Positions 27,601 to 57,695 of a DNA stretch of 64,000 nucleotides are shown here, piece after piece. Source of the stretch: Heteronotia binoei (lineage: Eukaryota); NCBI RefSeq assembly GCF_032191835.1, contig NC_083237.1, forward strand, positions 38,316,001 through 38,380,000. The letters run 5' to 3'. The stretch's first letter is position 1, and each line of letters begins with the position of its first letter. Both the position numbers and the translations under genes were made by a program. The notes beneath the pieces are model-generated. The model saw only the letters and a list, made by a program, of their open reading frames with translations, was not told the origin of the DNA and did no database searches.

Positions 27601-29647
27601 CATTCCTGGGGGGGGGGATTAGGCCCCCAGGCCTCCAACCAGTGATGGTGTTTGCACCTCCGGTCTGTGAAGTCTATCGTTTGTTCTCCCCATTGTATAT
27701 CCGGTTGGTGCTTAGCTAGCCACCCGACCCCCAATACTACGTCAAAGGATGATGAGGCGGTGATCTCAAACATTTCTATGTCCCACCGGTACATTTCTAT
27801 CCCCACCGGTACTCCCTGAGCCTCCTTTACACAGGGCTCCCCCTTCATTACGGACCCGTCCATTTTTTCGAATTGCATCGGGTGGGGTAGGGGCTTCCGC
27901 ACTAGCCCCAAAGCATCCACTAATTTTGGGGTGATAATTTCCCTCATGCACCCTGAGTCAATTAGGGCTCGGGCATGAATAAAGCGCTTCAGCTTTTGAT
28001 TCAGCAATGTCAATGGTACAAAAAATAAAGATCCAGTCACTCTCACCCGCAATGGTTCCGTTAGATCCACGACCTGCCTCCTGGCACCCCTCAGTGCAGG
28101 TCGTTCTCGTTTTCCGCCGGCTCTGTTGCTCAAGACTCCTCACTCGAGTCATCCAAAATTATAGTATTCTCATCTTGCATCGTCAATGTTGTGGTGTTTC
28201 CTTGAACCGACTCCTTGGGTCTGGTCAAAGCCTTCTTTGGTCCTGCTGAGGTCGGCTTCGGAGTAAGTGGGGGGGGGCTCGAGGTTTCTCCGGGCAATTA
28301 GTCGCTAAGTGGTTTGGGTCACCACATCGAAAGCATTTGCGCACCGAGGGAGTTTTGGGGGTCCCCCCCAGGCCACACTCTTCTTCCCGTCTGTCTTAGC
28401 CCCTGACCGAGCCTCACGTCCCCCCTTTCCCCCTTGCTGCAGTTGGCATTGGAGGGCCACTCGTTTCATATTAGTCTCCACTTTGCCTGCCAGCTGTACC
28501 CATCCCACCAGTGTGGTAGGGTGGGCTTGCTCAGTCCAGCAGACTCGTGTTTAGCCCTCTCTGAAATTCTTCAATCTTCATCATCTCGCTCCAACCTTGT
28601 ACCTTGAAATAGGCCACATACTCACGCACGGATTTCATCCCTTGCTGCATCACACACAAGGCTGTGATGGTCCGGGTCTCCTGGAGGGGATCTTCATACT
28701 GAGTCAGCAGTGCCTGCAGGAATCTGGCTACGGTGTCGAGCTCAGGACCCCTCATCTCGTACAGGCTTACATACCACCTCCTTGTGGCTCCTTTCAGCTT
28801 CGAACTGAGGTAGTCCACTCGGCTGTATTCATCAGGGAACGTGTTCCCCCAAAAGTGCATGTAACTATTGGCTTGAATGGTGAAATACTCTATCTTCTCT
28901 GGGTTGCCATCGAAGGTGGCATCCAGTTCTCGACCCCTCCTGAAGTCTCAAGGTGCCGGGAGTCCCTGTGGTGGTGCAGGGGCCCCTGGTTGTCCAGGTA
29001 CCACTGGAGGCACTTGAGGTGCCAGCACGTTTGGTGGTACCTGTGGTGCTGGTGCAATTGGTGGAGCCAACGGAGACCTCCCTGGGTCCAACCTCAGCAT
29101 CCGATCGATCTGCCTCTGCATCTCTTGCGCCATGAAGGTGGCGTTAGCTTGGATTTCGTCCCGTAATTTCCTCGCCATGGTAGTCATTTCCCCTCTCACG
29201 GTCTCCAGGATATCTGGCTCTTTCGGGTTGCCCCCATCTTCCTCCTCAAACCCAGCTGAATGGCTGTCCTTTGGCCGGGTTCCACCCCACTCATCTTCAT
29301 CTCTTACGGGGCAGTCTTCCCACCTTTCTCTGGGGTTCCCACCACCTTTGCACCCTCGCGCTGGTCTCGACAGGATGATCTCATGGCGTGCTGGTGCCTC
29401 ATCCATCAGCGCTGTGGAGGTGCGTGGCTCCCACTTCTGAGGGGTAATGAACAATTGCTGTATGTGCAGAGGGGACCCGTGCCCCCCCTGACTCTCCGAG
29501 TCCCAGCGATGTGCTGGGGGGGGGGGGTTCTGCACCTCTACTGCTTTGAATGGATCAGTAGGTTCTCAGTTATCTGGTGCTCTTTCAGCCATCCATCTTA
29601 AAAGTTGCCAGGTCAGATGAACTCTTAATAAAGGATCAGTTCCAAAA

Positions 29648-30065
29648 TGTCAAGCATGAAATCTCAAAATAACCAGTCCTTGAATATTGAAACAAAGTTT
29701 GGTTTATTGATAATCCATGTGGCTCTTTCGAGCTGGGGATTGGAACTGATACTCTGTAACACTAGAATACATGCTTTAAGATGGCACATCAAAGGTTCTA
29801 TAAACAATTCTACATTCACGTGTGAAATTCACGTGCTGGGTTCCTTATCTATATTGCGGCTAGCACATCCTGGATTCAGGCCTGGCTGAGCCTGAGAACA
29901 AGTCCCAAGAGGTCTTATCTTCAAAGAGGACATTCCTGCATTTGTTAGTAAAAGCGAAAGAAGAAAGATGGGGGTTACTACTTTGATGTTCCTGGGTTTA
30001 ATTCAGGGTTAGTAACAATTCTATATTCTGAATACTATGACAGAGGATAGAGATACAATGCTTGA
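29648..30065 (-). repeat. 5' LTR of Gypsy A
   Basis: About 96% identical to 24216-24633 by manual alignment. Confidence 0.93.
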
Positions 30066-30909
30066 TTCCCTGTTAATTCCCTGACATTTCCAGTTTTAGG
30101 ATCTCTGGGGAGAGGGAACATTTTCTCTGCCCAAGATCCTAGAGAGCTGCTCCCAATGAACGTAAGCAAAGCTGAGCTAGATAAACCAATGTCTGACTGA
30201 ATACAAAACAATTTCAAAGGTAGAGAACTTAAGTCATGTTATTAAATAAATATGTAGTACTAAATATAAACTGGAAATGATGTCATCTTCGATTTTAGGG
30301 ATTGTAATCTGAAATTGTAGGAAACTGTATGTAATTATTTGAATGATTTTATTGTGACTTTATTATCAATGCTATGTTGTTTTTAACTGTTGTTAGCTGA
30401 CCTGAGCCTGTTAGGGGAGGGTGGGGTAAAAATATAATAAATAAATAAAATTACATTTGGTGTTGCGTTAAGGTTGCCTTAGATACAGGTACCAAAGGAT
30501 ACTTTTATGAAACAATAAATCAGTATATAGATGTACTTAAGTGGATATTAGAAGAATTTGTATTGGTTGACCCCGCTGTGCTATATGATTAACACCAACA
30601 TCCAGAAACATCTATGATTTGATAGGTATGAGGAATGCCATGATGTAAGCTAAGCTGTTTTATACATGAGATATACATGAAGTAGGTAAAGTGAAATATA
30701 AATGAAGAAAGTAAAGTAAAATAAATGTTTTGGTTCCAGTCAAGAGCTTTTACATTTTAGCCCCAAGTCTGAAGAAGCAAGTGGATGCCAGGAAATACAA
30801 CTACCCATGCAATCATGTAATCACATTGCTTTATTGGAGTGATTTATCTTAGGCGAGACAGAACAGCTGTTGCATACTTTAAATTTATTATATAGATAAA
30901 GATATAGAC

Positions 30910-31045
30910 CAGGGTTGGCCAACAGTAGCTCTCCAGATGTTTTTTGCCTACAACTCCCATCAACCCCAGCCATCAGCTATTCTGGCTGGTGCTTATGGGA
31001 GTTGTAGGCAAAAAACATCTGGAGAGCTACCGTTGGCCACCCCTG
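30910..31045. mobile_element. Palindromic hAT-type MITE
   Basis: TIRs CAGGGTTGGCC...GGCCACCCCTG; perfect 8-bp TSD ATATAGAC at 30902-30909 and 31046-31053. Confidence 0.9.
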
Positions 31046-31176
31046 ATATAGACTACTGGAATTGTAAATGCAGTCAAGTTAAAACAGGAGATGGTGATGC
31101 TAAAGTTACCAATTTGACGGTGAAAATTGTCCTGTGTTATATTATTACAGTACTCATCCTTGAGCTACAGAAGCAG

Positions 31177-31178
<2 letters not shown>

Positions 31179-31209
<31 letters not shown>
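31179..31209. repeat. (GT)n microsatellite
   Basis: Direct reading of the sequence. Confidence 0.9.
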
Positions 31210-31211
<2 letters not shown>

Positions 31212-31351
31212 GTGCCATCAAGTCTTCCAATGTATGGTGGCCCTATGAATTAATGACCTCCAAAATGTCTTATCATTAAGCATGAGAACAGCCCATATCC
31301 AGGGCTATATAGGCTTTTAAAATGGCATTTTCTTATTTTATGCTACTCATA

Positions 31352-33487: not shown

Positions 33488-33488
<1 letters not shown>

Positions 33489-35395: not shown

Positions 35396-35536
35396 NNNNN
35401 NNNNNNNNNNNNNNNNNNNNNNNNNNNNNNNNNNNNNNNNNNNNNNNNNNNNNNNNNNNNNNNNNNNNNNNNNNNNNNNNNNNNNNNNNNNNNNNNNNNN
35501 NNNNNNNNNNNNNNNNNNNNNNNNNNNNNNNNNNNN
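35396..35536. other. Assembly gap (N run)
   Basis: N characters. Confidence 1.
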
Positions 35537-39755: not shown

Positions 39756-42700
39756 TTAATCCTCAAAAATTGTCCAATGTCCTTTTATTTTCCACTCTTT
39801 CTCTACATATCTTCTGAATTTCTTCCACTCTTGGTTAAAAAGTTCTAAATCACAGTCTCTTAATTTTCTTGTTAATTTGTCCATTTCACTCCATGACATA
39901 ACTTTCATAATCCAGTCCCATTTTTCTGGTATTTTTTCTTGCTTCCACAACTGCGCATACAATGTCCTAGCAGCTGAGAGCAAGTACCATATTAACGTTC
40001 TATCTTCTTTTGGAAATTTTTCCATTTGTAATCCCAGCAGAAAAGTCTCTGCCTCTTTATTGAATTCATATCCCAGGATCTTAGATATCTCTTGTTGAAT
40101 CATTTGCCAAAACATTTTAGCTCTTTCACAAGTCCACCACATATGGTAGAAAGAACCTTCATGCTTTTTACATTTCCAGCACCTATCTGGCATCTTATTG
40201 TTCATCTTTGCTAATTTTTTTGGAGTCATATACCATCTATACATCATCTTAAAACAGTTCTCTTTAATACTATGACATGTTGCGAGTTTCATGGAATTTT
40301 TCCACAGATATTCCCAAGATTCCATCTTTATTTCTTTATTTACATTAATTGCCCATTTTATCATTTGAGATTTCACTACTTCATCTTCTGTAGCCCATTG
40401 TAAAAGTAATTTGTACACTTTTGAAATTAATTTCTCATTATCTCCAAGCAGAACTCTTTCCATTTCTGTTTGTTCTTTCCTTATTCCTTCAGCTTTGATA
40501 TCATTCTCCATCAAACTTTTTATTTGTTGCATTTGAAACCAATCATATTTATAGTTTAGTTCTTCTGCAGTTTTCAATTCTATTTTCCCGCTTTGTATTT
40601 TTAGTAACTGGTTGTATGATAGTTGTTTTTCCTTGACTGTTTTGGCCGTTAACTTTATCACTTCAGCCGGCACTATCCATAAAGGTCTCCTCTCATCACC
40701 ATATTTCTTGTACTTTATCCACACATTTAATAAGCTACTCCTTATATAATGGTGAGAGAAAAGACCGTCCATCTTCTTTTTTCCATAGTACAAATATGCA
40801 TGCCAGCCGAATTTTTTTCCATGGCCTTCTAACATTAGAAGTTTTTTATTTAATAACGTTATCCATTCTTTTAACCATACTAAACAAATTGCTTCATGAT
40901 ACAGTTTCAAATCTGGTAATTGGAATCCACCTCTCTCTTTCGCATCTATCAGGACTTTCATTTTAATTCTAGGTTTCCTCCCGGCCCACACGAATTCCGA
41001 AATTTTTCTTCGCCATTTATCAAATTGCTTAGCATCTTTCACAATGGGGATGGTTTGAAACAGATACATAATCCTTGGTAAAATATTCATTTTTACTGCA
41101 GCTATTCTACCCAACAGTGACAAATTGAGCTTGTTCCACTTTAGCATATCTTCTTCTATTTTACGCCATAGCTTTTCATAATTGTTCTTAAACAAATCAA
41201 TATTTTTCATTGTTATCTCTACCCCTAGGTATTTTACCTTAGAGGTAACTTCACAACCCGTTAGTCTTTGTAGTTCTTGTTGTCTATTTTTCTGCATATT
41301 CTTACATAAGATTTTTGATTTTTCTTTGTTTATATAAAGTCCCGCCAACTCCCCAAACTCTTGTATTCTCATTAACAACAAAGGTGTAACTTGTAAAGGA
41401 TTTTCATTTATAAACATTATATCATCTGCAAATGCTCTGTATTTATAGGTAAATCCTTTTATTTGTAGTCCTTCTAAATCTTTTTCTTCTTGAATCTGCA
41501 TTAGTAAAATTTCAAGAGTCATTATAAACAGCAATGGCGAAAGCGGGCAGCCTTGTCTGGTACCTTTACTAATTTTCATTTCATCTGTAAGATCTGCGTT
41601 GATGCACAGCCTTGCACTTTGTTCAGAATATATTGCCTTTATCATTCTTATAAAACTTTCTCCAAGCTCCATTTTTTCCATCACTGCAAACATAAAGTCC
41701 CAATTTAAATTGTCAAATGCTTTTTCTGCATCCGCAAAGAATAGCGCTACTTCCTTTTCTGGATGTCTTTCATAATATTCTACAATATTTACAACAGTTC
41801 TAATATTGTCTCTTATTTGTCTTTTGGGAAGAAAACCGGCTTGGTCCTCTTTTATAAAATTTATCAAATATTGCTTAAGACGTTCTGCCAGAATTCTTGT
41901 AAATATTTTATAATCATTGTTCAAAAGTGAAATTGGTCTGTAATTTTTCACATTTGTAACATCTCTTTCTTCTTTAGGTATCAAAGAAATAACAGCTTCT
42001 TTCCATGTATTTGGTACCTTCCCTTTGACTCTTATTGCATTCATCAGCTTCTGTAATTTTGGTATTAATTCATCTTTAAACATTTTAAAATACTTAGCTG
42101 TATAACCGTCTGGCCCGGGAGCTTTATCATTTTTCATCACGTTGATTGCTGCCTCAATTTCTATTTTTTCAATTGGGTCATTCAAAATTTTTCTCATATT
42201 CTCAGTTAATGGCTCAATTTTTATTTTCTGTAGATATTCATCTATCTTTTTTCTCTTTACTTCAGCACCTTTAAACAGCTTGGCATAATACTTAAAAAAT
42301 TCTCTTTTTATTCCCTCTTGAGTAACTACGTCTCTTTCATCTATCACAATTCTATTAATTATTTTATTTTCCCTCTTTTTTTTCAGCTGCCACGCCAAGT
42401 ATTTCCCCGTCTTATTTGCTCCTTCAAACGATTTTTGCTGGAGCCTTTTCAAGTTCCATTCTACTTCTTTGTTTAATAAATGTCTTAGTTGAGTTTGCAA
42501 TATTGAAATTTCCCTTAGAATTTTCTTTTTCCCTGGTCTTTTCCTCAGCTCTCCTTCTTTTTTCTTTATTTCATTTTGAATATCCAGTAGTTGTTTTTCT
42601 TTTTCCCTTTTATCTTTATTGTTCAAAGTAATCAGCAACCCTCTCATTACTGCTTTATAAGCATCCCAGACCGTCTGAAAATCGATATCTTCTTTATCAT

Positions 42701-43515: not shown

Positions 43516-44267
43516 GGTGCAAATTCTTTATTTTCTTCAAAAAATCTCCTCAGTTCTCGGGCATTTGTGATCGTGACTCTCTTCCCCTGAAGTTCAAAGC
43601 TCACACCCTCGGGGATTATCCATCTATACCTTGTGCCATTGTCTTTCAATTTTTCTGTCAACTTTTTATATGTTCTCCTGTCATTTATCACTTCTTTCGG
43701 TAGCTCCTTCATAATTCTCACTCTGCTACCTCTTACTATCAATGATTGTTCAAAGTTTCTCTTCATAATCCTTCCCACCATTTCCTTTGTCATGAATCTT
43801 ACAACCACATCTCTTGGTAAGTTATTTTTTTTGGCATATAGCGAGTTGACTCTATACATGTGATCATACATGCTTTTAGTCTTATCAGGGTCTTCTTCTA
43901 AGAATTCTGCGATTATGTTTGTTATATATCCTTTCAAATCATCATTCTCTTCCTCAGGTACTCCTTTCAAACGTAGCTGATTTTCCATTAATTTGCAGTC
44001 GTGAATCGTCACTTTTTCTTGTACTTTCAGCAAGGTGGTATCATGTATTTTAACTTTCTCCTCCACCTCCTGTACTTTCTTGTCTATTTTCCCAATTTGG
44101 TTTTTGAGGTCATCCACTTCTTTTTTAATCACTGTAGTAAGTTCTTCCTTCAACTCTTCCATCATTTTCTTAACTCCTTTCATAATCCTGGCTTCCATAG
44201 CCTCCATTTGGTCTTGCATTTTATCTAATGAAAGGGCTCTTGTTCGGGGCTGCCTGGGCTCTGACAT
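43512..44267 (-). CDS. L1 #2 ORF1p, 251 aa, intact
   Basis: Heptad coiled coil, NQLRLKGVPE, YRVNS, LPRDVVVRF, RYRW. Confidence 0.88.
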   Translation of the reverse strand: MSEPRQPRTRALSLDKMQDQMEAMEARIMKGVKKMMEELKEELTTVIKKEVDDLKNQIGKIDKKVQEVEEKVKIHDTTLLKVQEKVTIHDCKLMENQLRLKGVPEEENDDLKGYITNIIAEFLEEDPDKTKSMYDHMYRVNSLYAKKNNLPRDVVVRFMTKEMVGRIMKRNFEQSLIVRGSRVRIMKELPKEVINDRRTYKKLTEKLKDNGTRYRWIIPEGVSFELQGKRVTITNARELRRFFEENKEFAP

Positions 44268-46299
44268 TTAAGCAAAGAGCAAGGGGGATGCAATTAAAAT
44301 ACCAAAAATTTCCGTCGCACAATTTGCAAGTTTGACTACCAAGTTCAGAAGGTCTAAATTTTCTCTCTCAATTAAACTTTGTTCTGTTTTCTTCTGAGCT
44401 TCCCAGGCCCAGATATAAATTTTTGAAGAATTTTTCCCCTTTAAAAAAATGACGAAATTTTTGACCTCACCAATTTAAAATCTGACAGTCAGGTTCAATA
44501 GAGCAGGGCTTGCCCTTTCCAGCAAGCCCAATTTCGCTGGTTTCTGAGCCCCCAAAGCAAAGATATTTAACAAAAAAGTCTTTAAAAAATCCAAAATGGC
44601 GGCCGCGATTTTTTCTCCTTTTAAAGATTTTTTTCCCCTTTTAAAATCACCCCAGGAGCCCACCAATAATGTAGTCAATAGTTCTTATCTTCTTACCCTT
44701 TTCCCTGTCGTTTCTGTCACTTTTTAAAGTCCCAAATCTTTTTAAAACGATGTTTTAAATTGGACCTCCCAGCAATGGCTGCCGATGTTTCTCTATGATG
44801 TAGAGTAGGCTTTTTTCTTTACTGCTTCCTGTCTCTGTCACCTTCAACCTTATAGATTGCTTGACGCACTTCCTGTCTTGCTCAGTAGAGTTAAAGGACT
44901 GTTCCAGTATATTCCTGCGCAGTATGGTTGTTTACATTCCACAAATCGTAAGTAGACACAACAATGATTTCTCTTCAATTTTTAGCAGTTTTTAACACTG
45001 TCTTTTATGTCAAAATAGTCCAAACTTCACCCTTCCCTTCTTCTACTTGCAAGTTTTATATTTTCCCCTTATTTCCACCTTTAAAACGTCTCTTTAGTCT
45101 GTAAATAGCTCCGGAGTGAAAGAAGAGTTTCTGTACCTTTTTTCCTCTGTTTATCCAAGTTCCACTGGTCTTCCAAGACTTTAGTTGTTTAAAAATGTCC
45201 CAGAAGGTTAGGATCGTGACGAGCTTATGCCAAATCCATGGCTCTGAGAGATCTTGCAGACGATAATTTTGCAAACTTCTGAGACTCCTCAAAGCCTCAA
45301 AGGACCCTTCTCCAAAGCTCCTTTTCAGCCAAGGTAAATCTCTTCTAAAGTTTTTAGTGCAAGTCTTGGACCTTTCTCTCACTGAGAAAGGTAGGCAGTG
45401 GGCTTTGGTTTGCCCTCCACTACCCCGAACAAGACCTTCAGCTTGCTCCCGTTACGAGAGACAACTCAGCTCGCCATTTTCCTCCCCGGAAGTCCGTAAA
45501 ACAGACATATTCCAACAGGACTATGGTTGTGAACAGCAATAGCTTTTGTACAATCACTCAGGTGCATTCATGCACACTTTGCAACTGAATTTTTACTGTG
45601 TAAGAATAGCAAAATCCACTTGTAAACAGTCACTGTGTGAAATCACCCCCTGTCATGGCCTCCTCCATGCCCAGTTCACAATCCACCCATGGAGGAAATG
45701 AAAATTGTCATGCCATCATTTATTGGGGGGATGTTTACTGATTTCGTCTGTTACTAATTTGCTTATATCTGTCAAGCATTGGTATTTTGAATAAACAAGC
45801 AGTTGTCTGATGCAAAGACTGGTTTTATTGACAATCCGTTGTTGGTTCAAGGTAGGATACCTTGAGAGTGATACAAAGTGTCACACAGCATAGTGTTTTA
45901 AGGGCTACTTCAAAGACAATAGAAAAGATAGCTTCAAGTCATAACATACAGATGTTAATTACTACAGATATTCAAAAATACTACCCACTGCTATCATGCG
46001 GTTATAACTTCCCTGGTTCCCAGACATTCCTGCTTCTTTTGATAAGCAGTATGAATGGGAACAATTCAGGGGAGGTGCCTCCTTTCTTTCCATCATCAAA
46101 ATTACTGGCATTCCTACGTTTTCTACCCAGAGGTGAGAAAAGAAAAGTAAAGGCAAGAAAAGCAGGAGGGGGGGGGGTTAGTTTTGAAATGCGACTATGG
46201 GAAAGAAGAGCTTCCAGGATAGATAGATAGAGAGGAATTGGAAACTAATAAATGTATTGCTCTAATACACAGAAATAGCATGCTTGACATACTGCTTCC

Positions 46300-46490
46300 C
46301 CTCAGACTTTTTCCGGGGTTTATTTGGGTTTAACTTGTAAAATTTCTTTATCAAATTTGCTGCTCTCACATTTGAAGCTTCCACCCACTCACTGTGACTT
46401 GGGGGAAAATGTTTCCATCTAATTAGAAAGTACAACACCCCTCTTTTTAATTTGGCATCTAGAATTTCTTGAACTTCATGGTGACTCTGA
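46300..46490 (-). pseudogene. Chromodomain at the C-terminus of the element D integrase
   Basis: Minus-strand translation HHEVQEILDAKLKRGVLYFLIRWKHFPPSHSEWVEASNVRAANLIKKFY. Confidence 0.85.
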
Positions 46491-48202
46491 TTCCCAGTCT
46501 GGATAGGCTGTGGAGCTTGTTGTCGAGGGTGCCAAGACGTAGCTCTAGGATCCTGGCGTAATAGGCTGCAATGAAAAACAGGTGGATTTTACTAAACATT
46601 TTTGGTAGTTCTGGTTCCACAGTAACTTTATTGATGACTCTCTTTATTTTGAATGGACCCAGCAATTTGTAAGCTAGTTTCCTTGAAGGTTGAGACACTG
46701 GTAAGTTCTTAATTGATAGGAAAATGGTCTCCCCTACTTTGAAGTCCAATACTGGAACATGATTTTTCTCATAATGTCTTTTGTAAGTGTCTTTAGCCAT
46801 TTCCAAGTTCTCTTGTATCACTTTCCACACTTTCCCTAAGTTTCCCCACCAATGTTCAAAGGATGATGGTAACTCTGGGGTATCTCCCCCTGATAGCAGG
46901 GGGAAAGGTTTTCCTTCGTAACCATTCACTACTCTGAAGGGGGAGGTTTTTGTAGAACTGTGGACACTGTTGTTATATGCATACTCCACAAAGGGCAACA
47001 AATCTACCCAATTGGATTGTTGGTAGTTTACATAGCACCGTAAATACTGTTCTAAAAGGGCATTCACTCTCTCCGTTTGACCGTCAGTCTGAGGGTGATA
47101 CGCTGAGCTCAGACCTTGTTCCATGCCTGCTAACTTACAAAACTCCCGCCAGAAGTTGGCAATGAACTGCGGTCCTCTGTCACTAATGATCTTATCAGAG
47201 AAAGAGTGTAATTTAACTATGTGTTGGAAAAATAGGTAGGCTAGCTTTTTTGCCTTAGGCAGTTGCAGGCACGGGATGAAATGGGCTTGTTTCGAGAAAG
47301 TATCTACTACCACCAATATCACGGTTTTTCCCTGGGACATTGGGAGCTCTACGATGAAGTCCATGGAGACTACTGACCAAGGTCTCCCAGCGATTTCTAA
47401 GGGTTGTAGTAATCCTGGGGGGTTTCCTCCCCTTTTTTTGCCATTATGCATACTGGGCAGGTGGCTACATAACTCGAGATGTCTTTTTTCATATGCAGCC
47501 ACCAAAATTGCCAGTTTACCAAATGCAAAGTTTTCACATAACCAAAGTGTCCTGAGATTTTACTACTGTGACAAAATTGTAGCACTTCTTTCCGGAGGCT
47601 CTCAGGCACATAGAGTTTCCCCTCTCAGTACCAGAATCCTCCTTCTCCTTTAATAACCCCATCTGGTTTATTATCTCCCTCTTTTTCCATCTCTACGATC
47701 AGTTTTTATCCTCCCCATTTCTCTTCTATATTTCCTTTTTTCACTTTAGATCTAGTAGTTGTCAAGTCGGCTGAATTCAATAACGAGTCTCTTGATAAAG
47801 TAGCAAGTTTATTGTAATCAGAACTGTGGACCATGGCAGAGATTGAAGGACTGAATCACATATGCACTAATCCAGTATTTAAAGTATGAATCTAAAGGAT
47901 TCCTACGGGGGGCAATCTATGCAACACATCTTCACACTAGGATGCTACTTCTTTCGTTCCCAGACCGAAGTCTTGACACCCCATACTCCCCACAGAGAAC
48001 AAGGCTGGGAAGGCGCCACTATCTTGTTCACAGGTTAGCATTTCAAAGCAGGTTACACAACAAAGGCATTTCTAGAGAGGGGGCAGGAGAGTGAGCTAGC
48101 AGCCCCCGGTGTACACTGTAAAGTACCCAGACTCCTTCACTTCAGAACCAACCTTAATACAGATATTGAGTAACCCATAGCAGACTTGACATACTGCCCC
48201 CC

Positions 48203-51200
48203 CTAGGATCCCCCTCCTGCCGGGCGGCCTTGCAAGGAGGGCGAGTCACATTTATGGCTCCGGAACTCGGGCCCCGAGAGGCTCCGGCACTCCCCCTTCG
48301 AGGGGAGGGTTGGTGAATCTTGTGAATGCCATTTGGACGGCCCCGGAGATCTGCGCAGTAGGCTGCAATGAAAAACAGGGTGGACTTTACCAAGAGCAGG
48401 GGGGAGGTCTAACTCTACTGTCACCGGGTTGATTACCCGCTTGATTTTGAATGGCCCTAAGAACTTAAAAGCCAATTTCCTAGACGGTTGTGCCAGAGGC
48501 AGGTTTTTTGTTGACAGGTACACGGAGTCCCCCACCTTCAAGTCCCAGACTGGCACATGGCTTTTATCGTACTGTTTCTTATACGCCTCCTTGGCCAGCT
48601 TCAGGTTTTCTTGAATGGCTGGCCAACATTGGCTGGGACCTTGCCACCATTGCTCGAAACTTGAGCCCGTCAATCCCTCCCCCCCTGGCAGCATGGGAAT
48701 CGGCTTTCCCTCATACCCGAACACTGTTGCAAAGGGAGATGCTTTTGTGGAACTGTGAGCGCTGTTGTTGTAAGCGTATTCAGCGAAGGGGAGGAGGTCC
48801 ACCCAGTCCGACTGGCGTAGGCTCACAAAGCACCGTAGGTACTGCTCTAGCACCCCGTTCACTCTCTCAGTCTGTCCGTCCGTCTGGGGGTGATAGGCAG
48901 AACTTAGCCCCTGTTCCATCCCTAGTAACTTACAAAACTCCCGCCAGAAGGTGGCAACGAACTGAGGCCCCCTGTCACTTATGACCTTGTCAGGGATGGA
49001 GTGATGTTTGGCCACGTGGTCGAAAAATAAAGTCGCTAGTTTCTTGGCCGTGGGTAATTGGCTGCAGGGGATGAAGTGGGCTTGTTTTGAAAACGTGTCC
49101 ACCACCACCAGTATGACTGTTTCCCCCCGGGGGGGGGGGGGGTAGCTCGACTATGAAGTCCATGGACACCATAGCCCATGGCCGTTTTGCTGTTTCCAGA
49201 GGCTGTAGGAGTCCCGGGGGTTTCCCCCCCCTCCTTTTTGCCATCACACACACCGGGCAACCAGCTACAAAGTCCGACACATCCTTCTTTAGGGACGGCC
49301 ACCAGAACTGCCGGTGCACCAAGTGCAAGGTTTTTACATAGCCGAAGTGCCCAGCTAATTTGGAGCAGTGACATAGTTGGAGAATTTCTTTCCTTAATAT
49401 TTCCGGGATGTACAGTTTCTCCCCCTTGTACCAAAGAGCGTCTTTTCTTTTCTGCAACCCCTCCGGCCGCCCACCTCCCTCCCGTTCGGCCTCTAGGGTG
49501 ATTCGTTCTTTGCTTAGTCCGCTCAATTCCTTTTTCCTCTGCGAGCGGGTAGTGACCATAGCCGCCACTTGTGTGGGGGGGATCAGGGAATCTACCACTT
49601 CCTCTCTCTGGCTCTCATGCTGTGGGAGCCTGGACAGGGCGTCTGCTAGGAAATTGCGGGTCCCCGGGATGTGTTTCAGGGTGAAGTCGAATCTGGAGAA
49701 GAAGCCCGCCCACCTGATTTGCTTTTCACTCAATTTTCTTTTCCCTGTTAGTGCCTCTAGATTTTTGTGGTCCGTCCATATCTCAAAGGGCACCCTGGCT
49801 CCCTCCAACCAGGACCTCCAAGTTTTCAGTGCAAACATGACAGCGAAAGCCTCTTTGTCCCACACTGACCAGTTCCTCTGCTCCTCCGAGAACTTTCGCG
49901 AAATGTAAGCGCAGGGTCTCAGCTTCCCCTCCTCATCCCTCTGCATGAGAATGGCTCCTACGGCGACGTCGGAGGCGTCGCATTGGACCACAAACCCCTT
50001 CCGCTCATCTGGGTGGCTTAAGACCGGCTCACTTGTGAACAGTTGTTTAAGCCGGTCGAAAGCCGCCTGACAAGTCGGTGTCCAATTCAGCCTGGCCCCT
50101 GGTCGCTTTGCCTCCTCCCCCTTCCCCTTCGTCTTCAGGAGGTCTGTTAGGGGCAGAGCGATCTGGGCGAACCCCTCAATGAATGTCCTATAGAAATTGG
50201 AGAATCCGAGGAAACTTTGGAGCTGTCTACGTGTCCTCGGGGGGGCCCACTCTAGAACTGCCTGAACTTTGGCTGGATCCATGGCCAGCCCGTCCCCAGA
50301 CACCCGGAAGCCCAAATAGTCTAGTTCCGTGCGGTGGAACTCGCATTTAGACAGCTTGGCGTAGAGCTGGTGCTTCAGCAGGGTGGCCAGCACTTCCCTC
50401 ACTAGTTTCACATGGGATTGTTCGTCTTGCGAATAAATAATGATGTCATCAAGGTACACCACCACCCCCTTGTACAGAAATTCCCGCAATACATCATTTA
50501 TGAAATTCATGAACACCCCCGGTGCCCCTTGCAATCCAAACGGCATGACTAAATATTCAAATTGCCCCATCGGGGTGTTGAACGCCGTTTTCCACTCATC
50601 CCCCTCCTTGATGCGCACTCGGAAGTACGCGTCCCGCAGGTCAAGCTTTGTGAAAATCTTCCCCCCCGCCACCGTGCTTAGCAAATCTTTGATGAGGGGG
50701 ATGGGGTAGGCGTTTGACATGGAAATCGCGTTAATCCCACGAAAATCCGTGCAAAGCCTAAGACTGTGGTCCTTTTTCTTTCTAAACAACACGGGGGCCG
50801 CGTGGGGGGCCGTCGCGGGTCTGATGAACCCCCTTTTCAAGTTCAAGTCTAGGAATTTTCGCAGCTCCTTCTTCTCAGCCCACCCCATTTGGTAGAGCTT
50901 GGCCCTGGGAAGGCTTTCCCCGGGGATTAGTTCTATCGCACAGTCTGTGCTCCTGTGGGGGGGTAGCTGGTTGGCCTCCCGCTCACTAAATACCTCCATC
51001 AGGTCGCGGTAGGCGTCCGGGACATGGTGCACCTCTTCCACCAGGACGCACGCCTCTCCCGAGCGGCTGGCGCTCGTGGCCCCCATGCTGCCTGCCAAAG
51101 GTGCTGGTTGCAACTTGGGTCGGGAAATCTGATGGTCTGGGCTCTCCAGCGGATGAGGGGCTCGTGCTTTTCCAACCACCCCACTCCCAGGACCACGGGG

Positions 51201-51568
51201 TAGCCGCAGGCGGGCGCGATCACAAACGTCTCTGAGTCCCAGTGATCCTCAATCCCCAGGGGGCACGGCTCAGTCTCTTGCGTGCAGGGTTCCCCCCCCA
51301 TTACTGACTCATCCATCTGTTCAAAGTGCATGGGGTGGGGCAGTTGTAAGCGTTTCAATCCCAGAGCCTCCACCACCTTGGGGGAAATCAGCTCTCTATT
51401 ACAGCCCGAGTCTATGAGGGCCCGGATCTGTAGGAACCTTTTTAGCTTTGGGTTCAACAATTTGACCACTATAAAGTACAACCTTCCCGTGGGTCTCACC
51501 GTGAGCGGTGCCTCCTCTCGGTCGACCTGCTGGTTGGCACCGTTCAAAGCAGGTCGGCGTCGTTTCCC
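48203..51568 (-). pseudogene. Pol of element C (PR-RT-RH-IN, no chromodomain) with two frameshifts (about 51055; G14 run 49129-49142)
   Basis: ALIDSGC, VYLDD, CDASD/WTDHKNL/ADALSR, HCSKLAGH...CPVC, MDFI/SDRG/TERVN, GPF module. Confidence 0.9.
51506..51568 (-). promoter_or_regulatory. Programmed -1 ribosomal frameshift signal (G GGA AAC plus pseudoknot) at the gag/pol junction of C
   Basis: Heptamer 51562-51568 in gag phase; 5-nt spacer; stem 1 CGACCTGCT/AGCAGGTCG; stem 2 CGGTGCC/GGCACCG. Confidence 0.85.
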
Positions 51569-53043
51569 GCCGGCTCCTCTTCCCACGCCAGCTCGGCCAG
51601 CTCCTCTGACAGACGCACCTCCTCCTCTTGTAGGTCGTCTTGCACCAGGAGCGCGCTGCTCTTCGCCGCGTCCTTAGGGCGGCCGGTGGTTTTCTTGGGG
51701 CCGGGGGTGCCCGGGCGGGTGGCTCCCTGCGGTGGGGCGGCCCCGGTGGCTGATTGGGGGCAGCCAGAGGCTAGATGGTTGGGGTCCCCACACCGAAAAC
51801 AACGTCGGGGCCCCCCCGGGGCAGCCACCGCCTGCTTCTTGACTTTAGGTGGCTCAGCCTTCCCGGGGCTTGCTTTCGGCGTTCCCCTGCCGGCGGCCAG
51901 TGCTTGGCGCAGCATCGCCACTCGTTTCAGGTTGGTCTCCACCTCCCCCGCCAGCGGAATCCACCCCACCAGGGTATCGGGGCGGGCTTGCGTGAGCGCT
52001 CTATCCAGGATGCTCGGGTTCAGCCCATTGGTGAAGTGCTCGATCTTCATCACCTCATTCCAGTTCCGAGCCCGGGCGGCGTTGGCCTGGAAGTCGGCCG
52101 CGTACTCCCGGATGGATCGGGCCCCTTGCTTCATGTTCCGCAGCGCCGCCAGCGCTCGGGTTTCTTGCAGGGGGTCCTCGTACTGGGTCAGCAGGGCCTG
52201 CACGAAAGTGTTTACGAAATGGAGGACCGGGCTGTTGGTTTCGCATAGGCTCACATACCACTTCTTCGCTGCGCCCCGTAGCTTCGACCCGAGGTAGTCC
52301 ACGCGGCTCATCTCATCGGGGAATGAGTCCCCCCAGTAGTGCATGTAGCTGTTTGCTTGGATCGCGAAGTAGTTCACTTCCTCCGGGTCCCCGTCGAACG
52401 TGGCGTCCAGCTCCCGGCCCCCCCCCCAGGTCTCTTTGTCTGACCGGGGCAGGGGGGGCGCCGCTGGGGCTTGCGGGGCCGCTCTGGGTGGAGGAGCGGC
52501 GGGGCCCTGTCGAGCCGGGGGTCCCCGCGGACCCGCCGGGGCTGGCTGTTGCTGGCGAGCCCCGGTCACCCCCAGCGCTCTGCCCAGCTGCGCGGTCAGG
52601 GTCTGCATCTGGTCCTTTAGGTCTCTCACCGCCCCGTCGATCTCCCTGCGGACCATCGCGCGAAACGTCTCGTACTCCTCATCGGTCTGGTCCTTGGGGC
52701 TCGCCCCTCCGTCCTCCGCTCCGCACTCGGCCCCTTCGCTTCCACTCTCGAGGTCCTGCGCCCCCGCGGCGCTGGCGCCTTCGCTCGCCTCGCCCGGGTG
52801 GACGGCGGTGGCCTCGGCCAGTTGGACCCGCTTGGTGTGGCGGGTCATGATCGCCTCCCGACGGACCGGGGCTTGATCCATCAGCGTAGTGGAGGTTCTT
52901 GGCTGGTATTGCCGTGGGGTCGCCACCAGCTGAAACTGTGGAGGGGAGGCCGCGGTCCTTCTGGCAGTATGGATGTGCCAGGGTGTCTCGGCCCCCTCCA
53001 CTCTGGTTGGGAATCCTCCATTCTCCGGAGACTGTTCGGACAT
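51544..53043 (-). CDS. Gag of element C (499 aa from MSEQ; PEG10/RTL-like capsid plus CCHC knuckle), intact
   Basis: FDGDPEEVNYF...YLGSKLRGAAKKWY...KQGARSIREY...FTNGLN; CFRCGDPNHLASGC; ATG at 53043. Confidence 0.9.
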   Translation of the reverse strand: MSEQSPENGGFPTRVEGAETPWHIHTARRTAASPPQFQLVATPRQYQPRTSTTLMDQAPVRREAIMTRHTKRVQLAEATAVHPGEASEGASAAGAQDLESGSEGAECGAEDGGASPKDQTDEEYETFRAMVRREIDGAVRDLKDQMQTLTAQLGRALGVTGARQQQPAPAGPRGPPARQGPAAPPPRAAPQAPAAPPLPRSDKETWGGGRELDATFDGDPEEVNYFAIQANSYMHYWGDSFPDEMSRVDYLGSKLRGAAKKWYVSLCETNSPVLHFVNTFVQALLTQYEDPLQETRALAALRNMKQGARSIREYAADFQANAARARNWNEVMKIEHFTNGLNPSILDRALTQARPDTLVGWIPLAGEVETNLKRVAMLRQALAAGRGTPKASPGKAEPPKVKKQAVAAPGGPRRCFRCGDPNHLASGCPQSATGAAPPQGATRPGTPGPKKTTGRPKDAAKSSALLVQDDLQEEEVRLSEELAELAWEEEPAGNDADLL

Positions 53044-53084
53044 CGCCTTTTCAGTTGCCGGAAAGGTTGAACTCCAAGATAGGG

Positions 53085-53094
53085 AGTCCTTCAA
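53085..53094 (-). promoter_or_regulatory. Self-priming PBS of element C, complementary to LTR 53180-53189
   Basis: Sense TTGAAGGACT lies 2 nt after the LTR; the sense LTR has AGTCCTTCAA at an Inr, 24-31 nt below TTTAAATA. Confidence 0.82.
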
Positions 53095-55439
53095 AATGTC
53101 AAGTCGGCTGAATTCAATAACGAGTCTCTTGATAAAGTAGCAAGTTTATTGTAATCAGAACTGTGGACCATGGCAGAGATTGAAGGACTGAATCACATAT
53201 GCACTAATCCAGTATTTAAAGTATGAATCTAAAGGATTCCTACGGGGGGCAATCTATGCAACACATCTTCACACTAGGATGCTACTTCTTTCGTTCCCAG
53301 ACCGAAGTCTTGACACCCCATACTCCCCACAGAGAACAAGGCTGGGAAGGCGCCACTATCTTGTTCACAGGTTAGCATTTCAAAGCAGGTTACACAACAA
53401 AGGCATTTCTAGAGAGGGGGCAGGAGAGTGAGCTAGCAGCCCCCGGTGTACACTGTAAAGTACCCAGACTCCTTCACTTCAGAACCAACCTTAATACAGA
53501 TATTGAGTAACCCATAGCAGACTTGACAGTAGTGACTGCCCCTACTAGATGATTGGGTGATATGATAGAGTCAATGACTTCTTCCCTTTGACTGTTGTGT
53601 TCAGGAAGTCGAGACAAAGCATCCGTTAAAAAGTTTTTGGATCCTGGAATATGTTTTAAAGTAAAATCAAATTTTGTGAAAAATCCTGCACACCGAATTT
53701 GTTTTTCAGTTTCCGGCGTCCCGTGAGTGCCTCTAAGTTTTTATGAACTGTCCAAATTTCAAACAGGACTCTGGCTCCCTCTAGCCAAGACCTCCAGGTT
53801 TTTAATGCAAATGTCATTGCAAATGCCTCTTTATCCCACATGGACCAATTTCGCTGCTCCTGAGAAAATTTTTTAGAAATGTATGCACAGGGCCTTAGTC
53901 TCTCTTCATCATCTGATTGCATTAAAATGGCTCCTAAAGTGACATCGGAGGCATCGGATTGGACCACAAAGGGTTGTAGCTCATCTGGGTGACTAAGAAT
54001 GGGTTCACTAGTGAATAATCTTTTCAGTTTATTAAACGCCTCTTGACACTTGGCTGTCCACTCTAGTTTCGCGCCTTGTCTCTTTGCTTCTGGGCCCTTC
54101 CCTTTTGTTTTAAGGAGGTCCGTCAATGGTAACATGGTATGTGCAAAGCTCTGAATGAAATTATGGTAAAAATTCGTGAAACCGAAGAATGATTGGAGCT
54201 GTCTACGTGTCCTCGGGGGTTCCCAATCTAGTACCGCTTGTATCTTGGCGGGGTCCATCGCTAACCCCTTCCTGGACACTCTGTACCCCAAGTATTCCAG
54301 TTCTGTTTTGTGGAACTCACACATAGACAATTTGGCGTATAGCTTATGTTCGTACAGAGTGTTGAGTACTTCCCGTACTAATTTCACATGAGATTGTGAG
54401 TCTTTGAAATAAATAATTATATCATCCTACAACACTACAACCCCTTTATACAAGTATTCCCTCAGTACTTCATTTATGAAATTCATAAAAACTCCAGGAG
54501 CCCCTTGTAATCCAAATGGCATGACTAAGTATTCAAACTGTCCCATAGGAGTGTTTAATGCCATTTTCCACTCATCTCCTTCCTTTACGTGCACTCTAAA
54601 GTAAACATCTCACAAATCTAATTTTGTAAAGATTTTCCCCCCAGACACTGTGCTTAATAGATCATTGATTAAAGAAAAAGGGTAGGCATTCGAGGTAGAA
54701 ATCCTATTGATCCTTCAAAAATCTGTGCAAAGTCTAAGCCCCCCGTCCTTCTTTCTAAACAATACTGGGGCAGCATGTGGGGCGGTCGCAGGTCTGATGA
54801 AACCGCTCTTTAGGATTTTATCTAAAAACTTCCATAATTCGGCCTTTTCTGCCCACCCCATAGAATACAGCTTAGCCTTATGGAGTTCTTGCCCTGGGAT
54901 CAGTTCTATAGCACAGCAGTATTCCGGTGGGGAGGAAGTTCGTTTGCTTTCTCTTCGCTAAACACCCTTTTCAAATCTTTATACTCCTTGGAGTTGGAGC
55001 ATACTTCTTCTACTGTTAAACATAGTAATTCATTCCTGGGGGTGGCTGCATGCCCCAAGTCTTGTCCCATTGGTGGTGTTTGCACTTACTATCGGTAAAG
55101 TCTATAGTTTGGTCTCCCCATTTAATGTCTGGTTCATGCTTCACCAACCAACCCACTCCCAGTACCACGTCAAAAGATGCGGAGGGGGCTATTACAAAAA
55201 CTTCGGTATCCCAGTGGTTTTCTATGCCCACTGGCACTACTTGAGTTTTATCAACGCATGGTTCCCCTTTCATTACTGTCCCATCCATCTGCTCAAATTG
55301 TATGGGTTATGGTAATGGGATCTTGGGGAGACCCAAAGCTTCCACTAATTAGGGTGTAATTATTTCTCAGGTGCATCCTGAATCAATCAGGGCCCGCACA
55401 TGTACAAATCTCTTTACTTTCGAGTTTAGCAAAGTCAAT

Positions 55440-55586
55440 GGGACAAAAAATAAAGATCCGGTTATTCTCACACTTAATGGTGCCGTTAGGGACAAAAAAT
55501 AAAGATCCGGTTATTCTCACCCTTAATGGTGCCGTTAGGGACAAAAAATAAAGATCCGGTTATTCTCACCCTTAATGGTGCCGTTA
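55440..55586. repeat. 49-bp tandem triplication in the element D pol leader
   Basis: GGGACAAAAAATAAAGATCCGGTTATTCTCAC(A/C)CTTAATGGTGCCGTTA x3 starting at 55440, 55489 and 55538. Confidence 0.95.
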
Positions 55587-55759
55587 GTTCCACGATCTGC
55601 TGCTCGGCACCTCTCAGTGCAGGTCATTCCTGTTTCCCGCTGGCTTGTCTTCCCAGGACATCTCGCTCAGCTCATCGATGATGATGGTTTCTTCATCTAG
55701 TGAAGTGGTGGCCACGGTGCTCCCTTTTTCTGGTTCTTTAGAATGACTGGTAGTCTTCA

Positions 55760-55840
55760 GGAGCCACCCTGAGCCCGCTTCAGTGGGGTAGGGCGGGATA
55801 TAAATCAAATGAAATAAAATAATAAATAAAATAAATAAAT
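55760..55840 (+). mobile_element. Short L2-type 3' tail inserted into the D gag
   Basis: GAGCCACCCTGAGCCCGCTTC...GGGCGGGATATAAATCAAAT(GAAAT/AAAT)n interrupts sequence that is contiguous in element A. Confidence 0.75.
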
Positions 55841-57695
55841 TCTTTGGTGCTGATGCACTGGGCTTCAAAGTAAGGGGGGGGCCTCGAGGTCATTCCGGGC
55901 AGTTAGCAGCTAGGTGATTTAGATCCCCACACCGGAAACATTGTGGGTTAGCCAGTTTGCTGGTTCCCCCGGGGGGATTCACTTGCTTCCCTTCAGGTTT
56001 TGCCCTAGACCAAGTTTCACGTCCCCCCTTTCCCCCTTGCTGCTGTTGGTGTTGCAGGGCCACTCTTTTCATGTTGGTTTCTACTTTGCCTGCTAATTGC
56101 ACCCATCCCACCAGTGTGGTGGGGCGAGCTTGCTGTAGAGCTCTATCCAGCACGCTTGCATTCAGGCCCTCTGGAACTGCTCTATTTTCTTCAGTTCGTT
56201 CCAACCCCAGACTTTGGCCGTGTTTGCGCGAAACTTGGCCGCATACTCACACACTGATTTTGACCCTCGCTGCATGTCTCGTAGTGCTGTCAATGCCCAA
56301 GTCTCCTGAAGTGAGTCTTCGTACTGTGTGAGTAAAGCTTGGAGGAAAGCAGCCACTGTGTCTAATTCAGGGCTTCTGGTCTCGTACAGTCTCACATACC
56401 ATTGTTTGGAGGTCCCTTTCAGCTTCAACCGCAGGTAGTCTACTCGACTAAATTCATAAAGAAATGTATTCCCCCAATAGTGCATGTAACTATTGGCTTG
56501 GATAGAGAAGTATTCCACTTCTTCGGGGTCGCCGTCAAATGTCATGTCTAGCTCTCGTCCTCGACCATAGTCTTGAGGGACCTGCAGTGGTGCCATCGTT
56601 GGTGGCAGCGGGGCCGGCAGAGGTGGTGTGGCAGGTTGTCTCTCCAGGGGAGGTATTGGTGCTCCCCTTGGGTCGGCTGGTCTTAGTACCTGATCGAGCT
56701 GTCTTCTAATTTCTTGTGCCATGAAGGTGGCATTGGCTTGAATCTCGTCCCCAAGCCCCTCGCCAGATTGTCCATCTCATTTCTCAGTATCTGGAGTATT
56801 CCTCGCTCATCGGGTTCAACCTCCTTCTCCTCTCCATCAGGGCCAGGTTGTTCTGGAGCTTCACCGTCTTTGCCCTCATCAGGTTGTGGTTCTTCTCGCT
56901 CCCCTCTGCTGATGGGTTGGGTGCTTTTGCACACTCCCCCCAATCATTACTCTTACTCTCTGGGAATGTCATGCCAGGATAGCTTCCCTCCAGGCTGGTG
57001 CCTCCTCCATCAAGGTGGTGGAGGTTTGCGGTTCCCAATTTCAGGGTGTAATGAGAAGTTGCTGCACATGCAGAGGGGATCCTCCCCCCACAGCCCGCCG
57101 AGTGTCTAGTATGTGCCATGGGGGGGTCCGCACCTCGATCTCTTCCTCTCGGTCACCTTGTCCTCTCTCCAGAGGGTTTGGGAGTTTACTGTTATCTGGA
57201 GCTCTCTCCGCCATTCAGTCAGAAAGTTGCCAGTTCAGTTGAATTCCAAAAAGATCACTCTCAAAATGTCAAGCATCGGTATTTCGAATAAACAAGCAGT
57301 TGTTTGATACAAAGACTTGTTCATTCTATACCAGTTATGCTCACATTGAGTACACTCTAATTTCCAGAAAAATAAATCAGTTTACTGAAAATATTGTTTT
57401 ATATTTATGCTTTATCTAGTTAACATTCCATGTTTTCATATGATGCTTTTTAAAAAGGGATTGGATTCAATGACATGTTTTCACTAAATGAAGAAAACTG
57501 CACTGCATGGGAGGAAGATTTCTCACTTGCAAAATAAGTCATTGGATCCATCCCAAATATTAAAGACATCATTTTTATTTGAGTATTATTTCATCATGCT
57601 TGTATTTCACTGTACTTTTATACAAGTTTTACTTGTCAAGACAACTTTAAAATATCATGCCACTCATAAATCTTTATAACAATATTACAGTTGAG

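What the first reader, a model, noticed from the sequence alone, without database searches (positions are those of the whole stretch)
29635..57264. Three Gypsy families have no tRNA PBS; each has a co-varying self-priming site complementary to its own transcript 5' end
On the sense strand every 5' LTR is followed by TT and then a family-specific sequence rather than the TGG of a tRNA PBS. A: TTGGAACTGAT (29635-29645) is complementary to LTR 29740-29750 (11 bp). C: TTGAAGGACT (53085-53094) is complementary to LTR 53180-53189 (10 bp). D: TTGAGAGTGAT (57254-57264) is complementary to LTR 45862-45872 (11 bp; only the 3' LTR retains the site). Each LTR partner overlaps an Inr match (TCAGTTC, TCAGTCC, TCACTCT), lies about 24-32 nt below a TATA-like box (CTTAAAG, TTTAAATA, TTAAAA) and sits upstream of AATAAA, where the cap site is expected. 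The three duplexes differ in sequence but keep pairing and a common CAA primer end, which amounts to a natural compensatory-mutation series. Self-priming is established for fission yeast Tf1 and was proposed for vertebrate Tf1/sushi-group elements; this is sequence evidence for it in reptile elements.
Basis: partly seen in the sequence, partly recalled or inferred. Interest (0 to 1): 0.85.

Follow-up and report, generated by a model that had tools for sequence, protein, structure and literature searches.

The report
Self-priming site in gecko Gypsy retrotransposons
Three related jumping genes in this reptile genome carry, where a tRNA primer site normally sits, a 10-11 base match to the predicted start of their own RNA; this is real, but it is the tRNA-free priming already regarded as typical of their group (Tf1/sushi), so it is an expected new example.

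Summary
All three Ty3/Gypsy elements lie on the minus strand. In each, the LTR ends in CTTGACA. Next come TT and a 10-11 nt segment that is the perfect complement of an LTR segment starting 93-103 nt before the LTR end.

- **Chance:** shuffled LTRs reach these match lengths in only 0.1-0.5% of trials per element. Cross-family pairings give at most 8 nt.
- **Position:** each LTR partner starts 29-31 nt below a conserved TATA-like box and 29-32 nt above AATAAA, where a transcript start is expected.
- **Relatives:** six related loci fetched here show the same layout with different sequences. They come from Paroedura, Sphaerodactylus, Crotalus and Sceloporus, plus two run-assembly contigs. That gives 9 of 9 families, all pairs Watson-Crick.
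- **Group:** element D has a Pfam chromodomain, and the nearest homologues are vertebrate chromoviruses. Self-priming is already described in the literature as a common feature of this Tf1/sushi group (V-clade), vertebrates included.
- **Not shown:** RNA reads were too sparse to map the transcript start. Tf1's two extra "pretzel" duplexes are not supported in A and C.
- **Assembly gap:** 35396-35536 lies outside all three elements.
- **Earlier notes:** this scan has noted the same layout many times elsewhere in this genome.

Verdict: real, well supported, a new member of a known kind.

The parts
29648..30067 (-). Element A 5' LTR (about 420 nt; 96% identical to its 3' LTR)
29740..29750 (-). 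A: putative self-primer ATCAGTTCCAA, at the predicted transcript start
29635..29645 (-). A: PBS TTGGAACTGAT, preceded by spacer TT (29646-29647)
29774..29780 (-). A: TATA-like CTTAAAG, at -29 from the first complementary base
29703..29708 (-). A: AATAAA, 31 nt after the primer segment
24216..24633 (-). A 3' LTR; its copy of the primer segment carries one change (ATCATTTCCAA)
53097..53528 (-). Element C 5' LTR (432 nt, 100% identical to its 3' LTR)
53180..53189 (-). C: putative self-primer AGTCCTTCAA; its first base is the A of the Inr-like TCAGTCC
53085..53094 (-). C: PBS TTGAAGGACT, preceded by spacer TT (53095-53096)
53213..53220 (-). C: TATA-like TTTAAATA, at -31
53145..53150 (-). C: AATAAA, 29 nt after the primer segment
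47760..48191 (-). C 3' LTR. C is inserted into D with target-site duplication ACTAC
45770..46289 (-). Element D 3' LTR (520 nt; termini TGTCAAGCAT...ATGCTTGACA)
45862..45872 (-). D: putative self-primer ATCACTCTCAA (3' LTR copy)
45896..45901 (-). D: TATA-like TTAAAA, at -29
45824..45829 (-). D: AATAAA, 32 nt after the primer segment
57267..57321 (-). D 5' LTR remnant (last 55 nt of U5 only)
57254..57264 (-). D: PBS TTGAGAGTGAT, preceded by spacer TT (57265-57266)
46316..46582 (-). D integrase C-terminal chromodomain (Pfam Chromo, E 7.6e-10)
51547..53043 (-). C gag (499 aa: DUF4939/PEG10-type capsid, Retrotrans_gag, CCHC); its ATG is 53 nt after the LTR

Best explanation
A, C and D are three families of one clade of vertebrate chromovirus-type Ty3/Gypsy retrotransposons (Tf1/sushi group, V-clade). 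They start reverse transcription without a tRNA.

Proposed mechanism:
1. Transcription begins about 30 nt below the LTR TATA-like box, so the first 10-11 nt of the RNA are the LTR segment found here.
2. This 5' end folds back about 100 nt onto the complementary PBS, which lies 2 nt after U5.
3. As in Tf1, the element's RNase H cuts the RNA at the end of the duplex.
4. The freed 3'-OH (…CAA in these families) primes minus-strand DNA synthesis through U5 and R.
5. Because the primer is then copied back into the PBS during plus-strand synthesis, primer and PBS stay complementary while drifting between families. This would produce the observed two-sided changes.

Shown here: the complementarity, its position, its non-random nature, its co-variation in nine families, and the clade assignment. 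Inferred, not shown: the transcript start, the RNase H cut and the priming itself.
For: - Exact 10-11 nt complements at offset +2 from the LTR end in all three elements. Shuffles reach them in 0.1-0.5% of trials, and cross-family matches are at most 8 nt.
- The partner starts 93-103 nt from the LTR end in all three. A TATA-like box conserved in the alignment lies at -29/-31, and AATAAA lies 29-32 nt downstream.
- Minimum-energy folds of the natural A and C leader RNAs close the 5' end onto the PBS (z = -3.8 for A). The same holds for the Paroedura and Crotalus relatives.
- Six of six related loci fetched show the layout with other sequences: L005 Paroedura, L001 Sphaerodactylus, L002 Crotalus, L003 Sceloporus, L004 and L006 run assemblies.
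- All 9 duplexes are fully Watson-Crick, with 3-9 of 10 positions differing between families.
- No TGG at the PBS in C or D. No tRNA gene in the window.
- Domain order is gag(DUF4939)-PR-RT-RH-IN. D has a chromodomain. The nearest pol homologues are squamate and fish chromoviruses.
[quoted passage not shown] It has been described for yeast and vertebrate members (PMC6317226). The survey criterion there is a complement of 10 bp or more starting 0-5 bp after the 5' LTR, which is met here.
Against: - No measured transcript 5' end. RNA reads of the same species label cover element C at depth below 2, on both strands, with no pile of starts.
- In A and D the Inr-like A lies 3 nt inside the match, so part of the duplex might not be transcribed.
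- Tf1's two flanking 'pretzel' duplexes are not better than shuffled controls in A and C.
- D's partner is known only from the 3' LTR.
- A's 3' LTR copy has one mismatch.
- A and D are degraded and C has a frame break in the integrase, so the mechanism applies to the families rather than to these copies.
- A has TGG at offset 3, so a tRNA match cannot be formally excluded for A without the species' tRNA set.
Confidence: 0.8

Rival explanations
1. The LTR-leader complementarity is a long-range closing stem of the 5' UTR with another role, such as packaging, dimerisation or translation control. Reverse transcription would then be primed by a host RNA not identified here, for example a tRNA fragment.
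For: The duplex closes a roughly 100-nt domain in the predicted folds, as regulatory stems do. The species' tRNA set could not be searched. A has TGG at offset 3.
Against: The downstream arm begins 1-2 nt after the LTR end in every family with a defined LTR end, exactly where a PBS must be. Its length of 10-12 nt matches Tf1's. The sequence differs in every family, which no shared host primer could match. C and D have no TGG.
Confidence: 0.1
2. Self-priming occurs in trans: the 5' end of a second co-packaged RNA molecule, or a short abortive transcript, anneals to the PBS instead of the same molecule folding back.
For: Sequence complementarity cannot tell cis from trans. The flanking intramolecular 'pretzel' duplexes are not supported in A and C.
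Against: Folds of single molecules already favour the intramolecular duplex. Tf1, the only tested case, is described as forming an intramolecular three-duplex structure (PMC10085805).
Confidence: 0.07
3. The matches are chance, or shared ancestry without function.
For: 10-11 nt matches occur in 0.1-0.5% of shuffles per element. The three elements are relatives.
Against: All three elements share the same offset and the same LTR position. The sequences differ at 3-6 of 10 positions between the window families, each change compensated. Six further loci repeat the layout.
Confidence: 0.02

Closest known systems
Tf1 / Tf2 (Schizosaccharomyces pombe), and Tj1 and Tosmo elements of other fission yeasts
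   Same: The PBS is complementary to the first ~11 nt of the element's own mRNA rather than to a tRNA and lies just after the 5' LTR. They are chromodomain-bearing Ty3/Gypsy elements (PMC10085805, PMC4600332).
   Different: Self-priming and the RNase H cut are shown by experiment only for Tf1. Here the two flanking 'pretzel' duplexes are not supported in A and C. The host is a reptile, and the gag is of the PEG10/RTL (DUF4939) type.
sushi-ichi and other vertebrate Tf1/sushi elements (Butler et al. 2001, J Mol Evol 52:260; cited in PMC6317226, PMC4600332, PMC10085805)
   Same: They are vertebrate chromoviruses for which self-priming was proposed from the same kind of LTR-PBS complementarity. 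A Takifugu homologue (P0197) shares the DUF4939 gag domain. The run-assembly contig L004 (host not identified), with a chromodomain, shows the same layout.
   Different: Pol identity to the fish elements is only 43-47%. I could not read Butler et al., so which vertebrate classes they covered is not checked here.
Amn-ichi (Anolis carolinensis) and the GyDB 'V-clade' (Piskurek et al. 2008, Gene 441:111; PMC2774666)
   Same: It is a full-length chromodomain-containing Gypsy element of a squamate. The V-clade is recorded in fish, amphibians and sauropsids. Anolis proteins are among the nearest homologues, at 52-59% identity.
   Different: I could not check whether that paper discussed the PBS. The window's families are gecko-type (65-69% to Paroedura), and family C has lost the chromodomain.
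tRNA-primed Ty3/Gypsy elements and retroviruses
   Same: Same overall LTR-PBS-gag-pol-PPT-LTR architecture, a 2-nt spacer between U5 and the PBS, and TG...CA termini. The best solved relative is Ty3 Gag-Pol (7q5b, E 1e-91).
   Different: C and D have no TGG-initiated match of about 18 nt to a tRNA 3' end. The PBS is short, family-specific and matches the element's own LTR.

Membership tests
Ty3/Gypsy (Metaviridae) LTR retrotransposon | LTRs with TG...CA termini, a PPT before the 3' LTR, and domain order gag-PR-RT-RNaseH-IN | tested here: met
   LTR pairs and PPTs. Pfam domains in order. Best solved relative is Ty3 Gag-Pol, E 1e-91.
Chromovirus, Tf1/sushi group (V-clade) | Chromodomain at the integrase C-terminus | tested here: met
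   D has Pfam Chromo, E 7.6e-10, above the cut-off. A has a recognisable but degraded copy. C lacks it, which reads as a secondary loss.
Chromovirus, Tf1/sushi group (V-clade) | Phylogenetic placement with sushi-ichi, Amn and Tf1 reference elements | tested here: inconclusive
   The nearest homologues are squamate and fish Gypsy proteins carrying Chromo. Fungal (Ustilago) and amoebozoan (Planoprotostelium) hits also appear among the listed hits. The gag DUF4939/PEG10-type domain is shared with a Takifugu homologue.
Tf1-type self-priming elements | PBS directly after the 5' LTR, complementary to a 5' LTR segment rather than to a tRNA (survey criterion: 10 bp or more, starting 0-5 bp after the LTR; PMC6317226) | tested here: met
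   Matches of 11, 10 and 11 bp at offset 2. 9 of 9 families including relatives.
Tf1-type self-priming elements | The complementary LTR segment is the very 5' end of the transcript | tested here: inconclusive
   A TATA-like box at -29/-31 and an Inr-like motif fit. RNA reads were too sparse to show starts.
Tf1-type self-priming elements | Three-duplex 'pretzel' RNA structure: the primer-PBS duplex plus two duplexes between PBS-adjacent and LTR sequences | tested here: inconclusive
   The central duplex is present in the minimum-energy folds. The flanking duplexes are no better than shuffles in A and C. Only the Crotalus relative has a strong U5-IR-type stem (0 of 500 shuffles).
Tf1-type self-priming elements | RNase H cleavage of the RNA duplex releasing an ~11-nt primer that starts minus-strand cDNA | not testable with these tools
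   Needs biochemical mapping of cDNA intermediates.
tRNA-primed LTR elements | PBS beginning TGG, complementary to about 12-18 nt of a tRNA 3' end | tested here: not met
   C (TTTTGAAGGACT) and D (TTTTGAGAGTGAT) have no TGG within 5 nt of the LTR end. A has TGG at offset 3. No tRNA gene lies in the window. The species' full tRNA set could not be searched.

The most novel reading that the evidence does not exclude
Primer and PBS are rewritten from each other at every replication cycle. This would let squamate chromoviruses drift freely in PBS sequence. A family-specific, tRNA-independent PBS would then escape host defences that recognise conserved tRNA-type PBS sequences, such as 3' tRNA fragments and PBS-binding zinc-finger repressors. 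That could help explain why this clade stays young and diverse in squamates: C has identical LTRs and the Paroedura copy has 99.8% identical LTRs.
Probability: 0.12. Interest if true: 0.6.

Novelty: new member of a known kind. Interest (0 to 1): 0.25.

Why it matters
It adds clean sequence-level support, with two-sided changes across nine squamate and other vertebrate families, for tRNA-independent self-priming in amniote chromoviruses. This mechanism has been proven by experiment only in fission yeast. It points to very young gecko families as places where the transcript start and cDNA intermediates could be measured in a vertebrate. It does not change the current picture, because the literature already treats self-priming as typical of the Tf1/sushi group. 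For annotation, PBS finders based on tRNAs will miss these elements, so a self-complement rule should be used for this clade.

Tried and rejected
- **RNA evidence for the transcript start:** two run searches and one read laying on element C with three raw-read RNA runs of the same species label and one contig run. Depth was below 2 on both strands and no start pile was seen, so there is no verdict on the start.
- **gag-based homologue search:** it returned only one protein, from Heteronotia binoei, in both attempts. I switched to pol.
- **Look-ups that gave no DNA:** P0003 is not on record, P0017's file is too large, and one look-up was not sent.
- **Flanking 'pretzel' duplexes:** helix search and duplex energies against shuffles gave no support in A or C.
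- **PDB search with gag:** no hit.
- **tRNA genes in the window:** none.
- **Folding a D leader RNA:** not done.
- **Papers not held:** Lin & Levin 1997, Levin 1995, Lin & Levin 1998 and Atwood-Moore 2006. Butler 2001 and Piskurek 2008 are cited only through papers that cite them.
Full report
**Layout of the region**

All relevant elements lie on the minus strand.

- **Element A:** LTRs at 24216-24633 and 29648-30067, 96% identical.
- **Element C:** LTRs at 47760-48191 and 53097-53528, 432 nt and 100% identical. It has the target-site duplication ACTAC and is inserted into element D.
- **Element D:** 3' LTR at 45770-46289. Its interior is split into 46290-47759 and 53529-57266. Its 5' LTR is reduced to the last 55 nt (57267-57321).
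- **'B' (39756-44267):** an L1-like LINE, unrelated to the finding.
- **Assembly gap 35396-35536:** it lies between A and this LINE. No element or pairing partner spans it, so it does not affect the finding.

On the sense strand each LTR ends in CTTGACA. It is followed by TT and then a family-specific segment. That segment is the exact complement of an LTR segment that starts 93-103 nt before the LTR end.

| Element | PBS-like segment | LTR partner | Length |
|---|---|---|---|
| A | TTGGAACTGAT | ATCAGTTCCAA | 11 bp |
| C | TTGAAGGACT | AGTCCTTCAA | 10 bp |
| D | TTGAGAGTGAT | ATCACTCTCAA (3' LTR copy) | 11 bp |

- Dinucleotide-preserving shuffles of each LTR reach the observed length in 11, 23 and 7 of 5000 trials, and in 5, 10 and 5 of 3000.
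- Used as pseudo-PBS, only 0-3 of about 5000 interior positions per element have a complement of 10 nt or more in their own LTR.
- A leader tested against another family's LTR gives at most 8 nt.
- The same offset (+2) and the same LTR position recur in all three.

Chance is therefore excluded.

**Position of the LTR partner**

- A TATA-like box lies at -29 to -31 from the first complementary base: CTTAAAG in A, TTTAAATA in C, TTAAAA in D. The three boxes fall in aligned, conserved columns.
- AATAAA follows 29-32 nt after the segment.
- In C the first complementary base is the A of an Inr-like TCAGTCC.
- In A and D the Inr-like A lies 3 nt inside the match, so the exact start is open by about 3 nt.
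- Folds of the natural A and C RNAs, from the predicted start to beyond the PBS, close the 5' end onto the PBS in the minimum-energy structure. For A, z = -3.8 and 0 of 200 shuffles fold as well.

**What the elements are**

- C encodes a gag with DUF4939 (PEG10/RTL type), Retrotrans_gag and a CCHC knuckle. It also encodes PR, RT, RNase H, integrase H2C2, rve and the Tf2-1-type SH3 domain.
- A and D have the same order.
- The three share 39-41% (gag) to 64-79% (pol) amino-acid identity, so they are distinct families of one clade.
- D carries a Pfam chromodomain (E 7.6e-10). A has a degraded one. C has none.
- The nearest pol homologues are from the gecko Paroedura picta (65-69%) and other squamates (52-63%). 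Fish Gypsy proteins with chromodomains follow at 43-47%, and fungal (Ustilago, 40%) and amoebozoan (Planoprotostelium, 44%) relatives appear in the same list.
- The best solved relative is Ty3 Gag-Pol.

This fits the 'Fungi/Vertebrates' chromovirus cluster, that is the Tf1/sushi group or V-clade. I did not build a tree with named references.

**Co-variation beyond the window**

I fetched six related loci through pol homologues. Every one shows the layout with a different sequence.

| Locus | Source | Spacer | PBS | LTR partner | Notes |
|---|---|---|---|---|---|
| L005 | Paroedura | AA | TTGATAATAAC | GTTATTATCAA | LTRs 99.8% identical; partner 160 nt from the LTR end |
| L001 | Sphaerodactylus | TT | ATGCTGAATCT | AGATTCAGCAT | partner starts 95 nt upstream of the PBS; TAAAAG at -30 |
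| L002 | Crotalus | G | AAAGTCAGCACT | AGTGCTGACTTT | partner 103 nt from the LTR end |
| L004 | run-assembly contig, chromodomain present | G | AACGAACTGGC | GCCAGTTCGTT | |
| L003 | Sceloporus | (5' LTR not in contig) | TTTGCCAAAACT | match in the 3' LTR | |
| L006 | run-assembly contig | (LTR end not defined) | AAGTCAGTGCT | AGCACTGACTT | partner 31 nt below TATAAAA |

- Shuffle tests on the three relatives with defined LTR ends that were tested (L002, L004, L005) give 1 of 3000 each.
- All nine duplexes are fully Watson-Crick.
- When the PBS sequences are lined up from their 5' ends, families differ at 3-9 of 10 positions.

**Mechanism**

The best reading is Tf1-type self-priming:

1. The first 10-12 nt of the RNA fold back on the PBS.
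2. RNase H cuts at the end of the duplex.
3. The freed 3' end primes minus-strand synthesis.

The perfect two-sided changes may owe as much to the mechanism as to selection. If the primer is copied back into the PBS during plus-strand synthesis, each cycle renews the match. This is my inference from the general retroviral scheme and from the title of Atwood-Moore et al. 2006, a paper I could not read.

The following are not shown here:

- **The transcript start.** RNA reads of the same species label covered C at depth below 2 on both strands, and no start pile was seen.
- **The cut and the priming.**
- **Tf1's two flanking 'pretzel' duplexes.** They are no better than shuffled controls in A and C. 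Only the Crotalus relative has a strong U5-IR-type stem.

**Comparison with what is known**

- PMC6317226 says self-primers were described in the Tf1/sushi group from yeast and vertebrates (Butler et al. 2001; Lin & Levin 1997). Its survey uses the criterion of a complement of 10 bp or more starting 0-5 bp after the 5' LTR, which is met here.
- PMC4600332 says the mechanism has been implicated 'from fungi to vertebrates'.
- PMC2774666 records the V-clade in fish, amphibians and sauropsids, and cites a full-length Anolis chromovirus (Piskurek et al. 2008).

The finding is therefore a well-supported new member of a known kind.

This scan's own index lists 84 notes on self-priming elsewhere in this genome. 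Two follow-up reports reached the same verdict. I reached mine from my own tests before reading them.

**Verdict**

Novelty is modest and interest is low to moderate.

Noticed in passing
window 47760-53528 within 45770-57321: Element C (identical LTRs, TSD ACTAC) is nested inside the older element D of a related family. D's 5' LTR is cut down to 55 nt at 57321, and the rest is not found in the window.
   Followed up: partly
window 48192-48391: The youngest family, C, lacks the integrase chromodomain that D has and A retains in degraded form. Similarity to chromodomain-bearing relatives stops right after the HPVFH..LL motif.
   Followed up: yes
window about 48990-49130: Despite identical LTRs, C changes reading frame inside the integrase. 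The 729-aa pol ORF ends at 48990, while the rve/SH3 part continues in another frame from about 49108. This copy is probably not autonomous.
   Followed up: partly
window 51544-51570 (minus strand): A GGGAAAC heptamer lies 21 nt before the gag stop of C, where the PR frame overlaps. This is the same slippery site as in PEG10-type -1 frameshifting.
   Followed up: partly
window 29590-29625, 53040-53075, 57210-57245 (minus strand): A leader motif between the PBS and the gag ATG is conserved among A, C and D but absent from the Paroedura relative: GAGTTCA(A/T)C ... C(T/C)GGCAACT. It could be a packaging or dimerisation signal.
   Followed up: no
window 30066-30072 and 24206-24215: Element A's 5' LTR begins AA instead of the TG seen in its 3' LTR and in C and D. 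No target-site duplication is evident (CAGGG against GGTTC). This suggests a damaged end or a recombinant copy.
   Followed up: partly
window 39756-44267: An L1-like LINE on the minus strand has long open frames: ORF1-like 251 aa, endonuclease 156 aa, and an RT-bearing ORF of 1112 aa.
   Followed up: partly
window 30909-31045 and 58197-58346: Two copies of a self-complementary repeat of about 137-150 bp (86-93% identity in both orientations), which look like miniature inverted-repeat elements.
   Followed up: no
L002 5251-6291, 11699-12320, 15130-17985: In the Crotalus tigris locus a tandem satellite of about 164 bp flanks the Gypsy element on both sides.
   Followed up: no
L001, L004, L006: Several short contigs carry pol end-LTR-gag start, or a 6281-bp tandem period. 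This is as expected from tandem elements sharing one LTR, or from circular or collapsed assemblies of young families.
   Followed up: no
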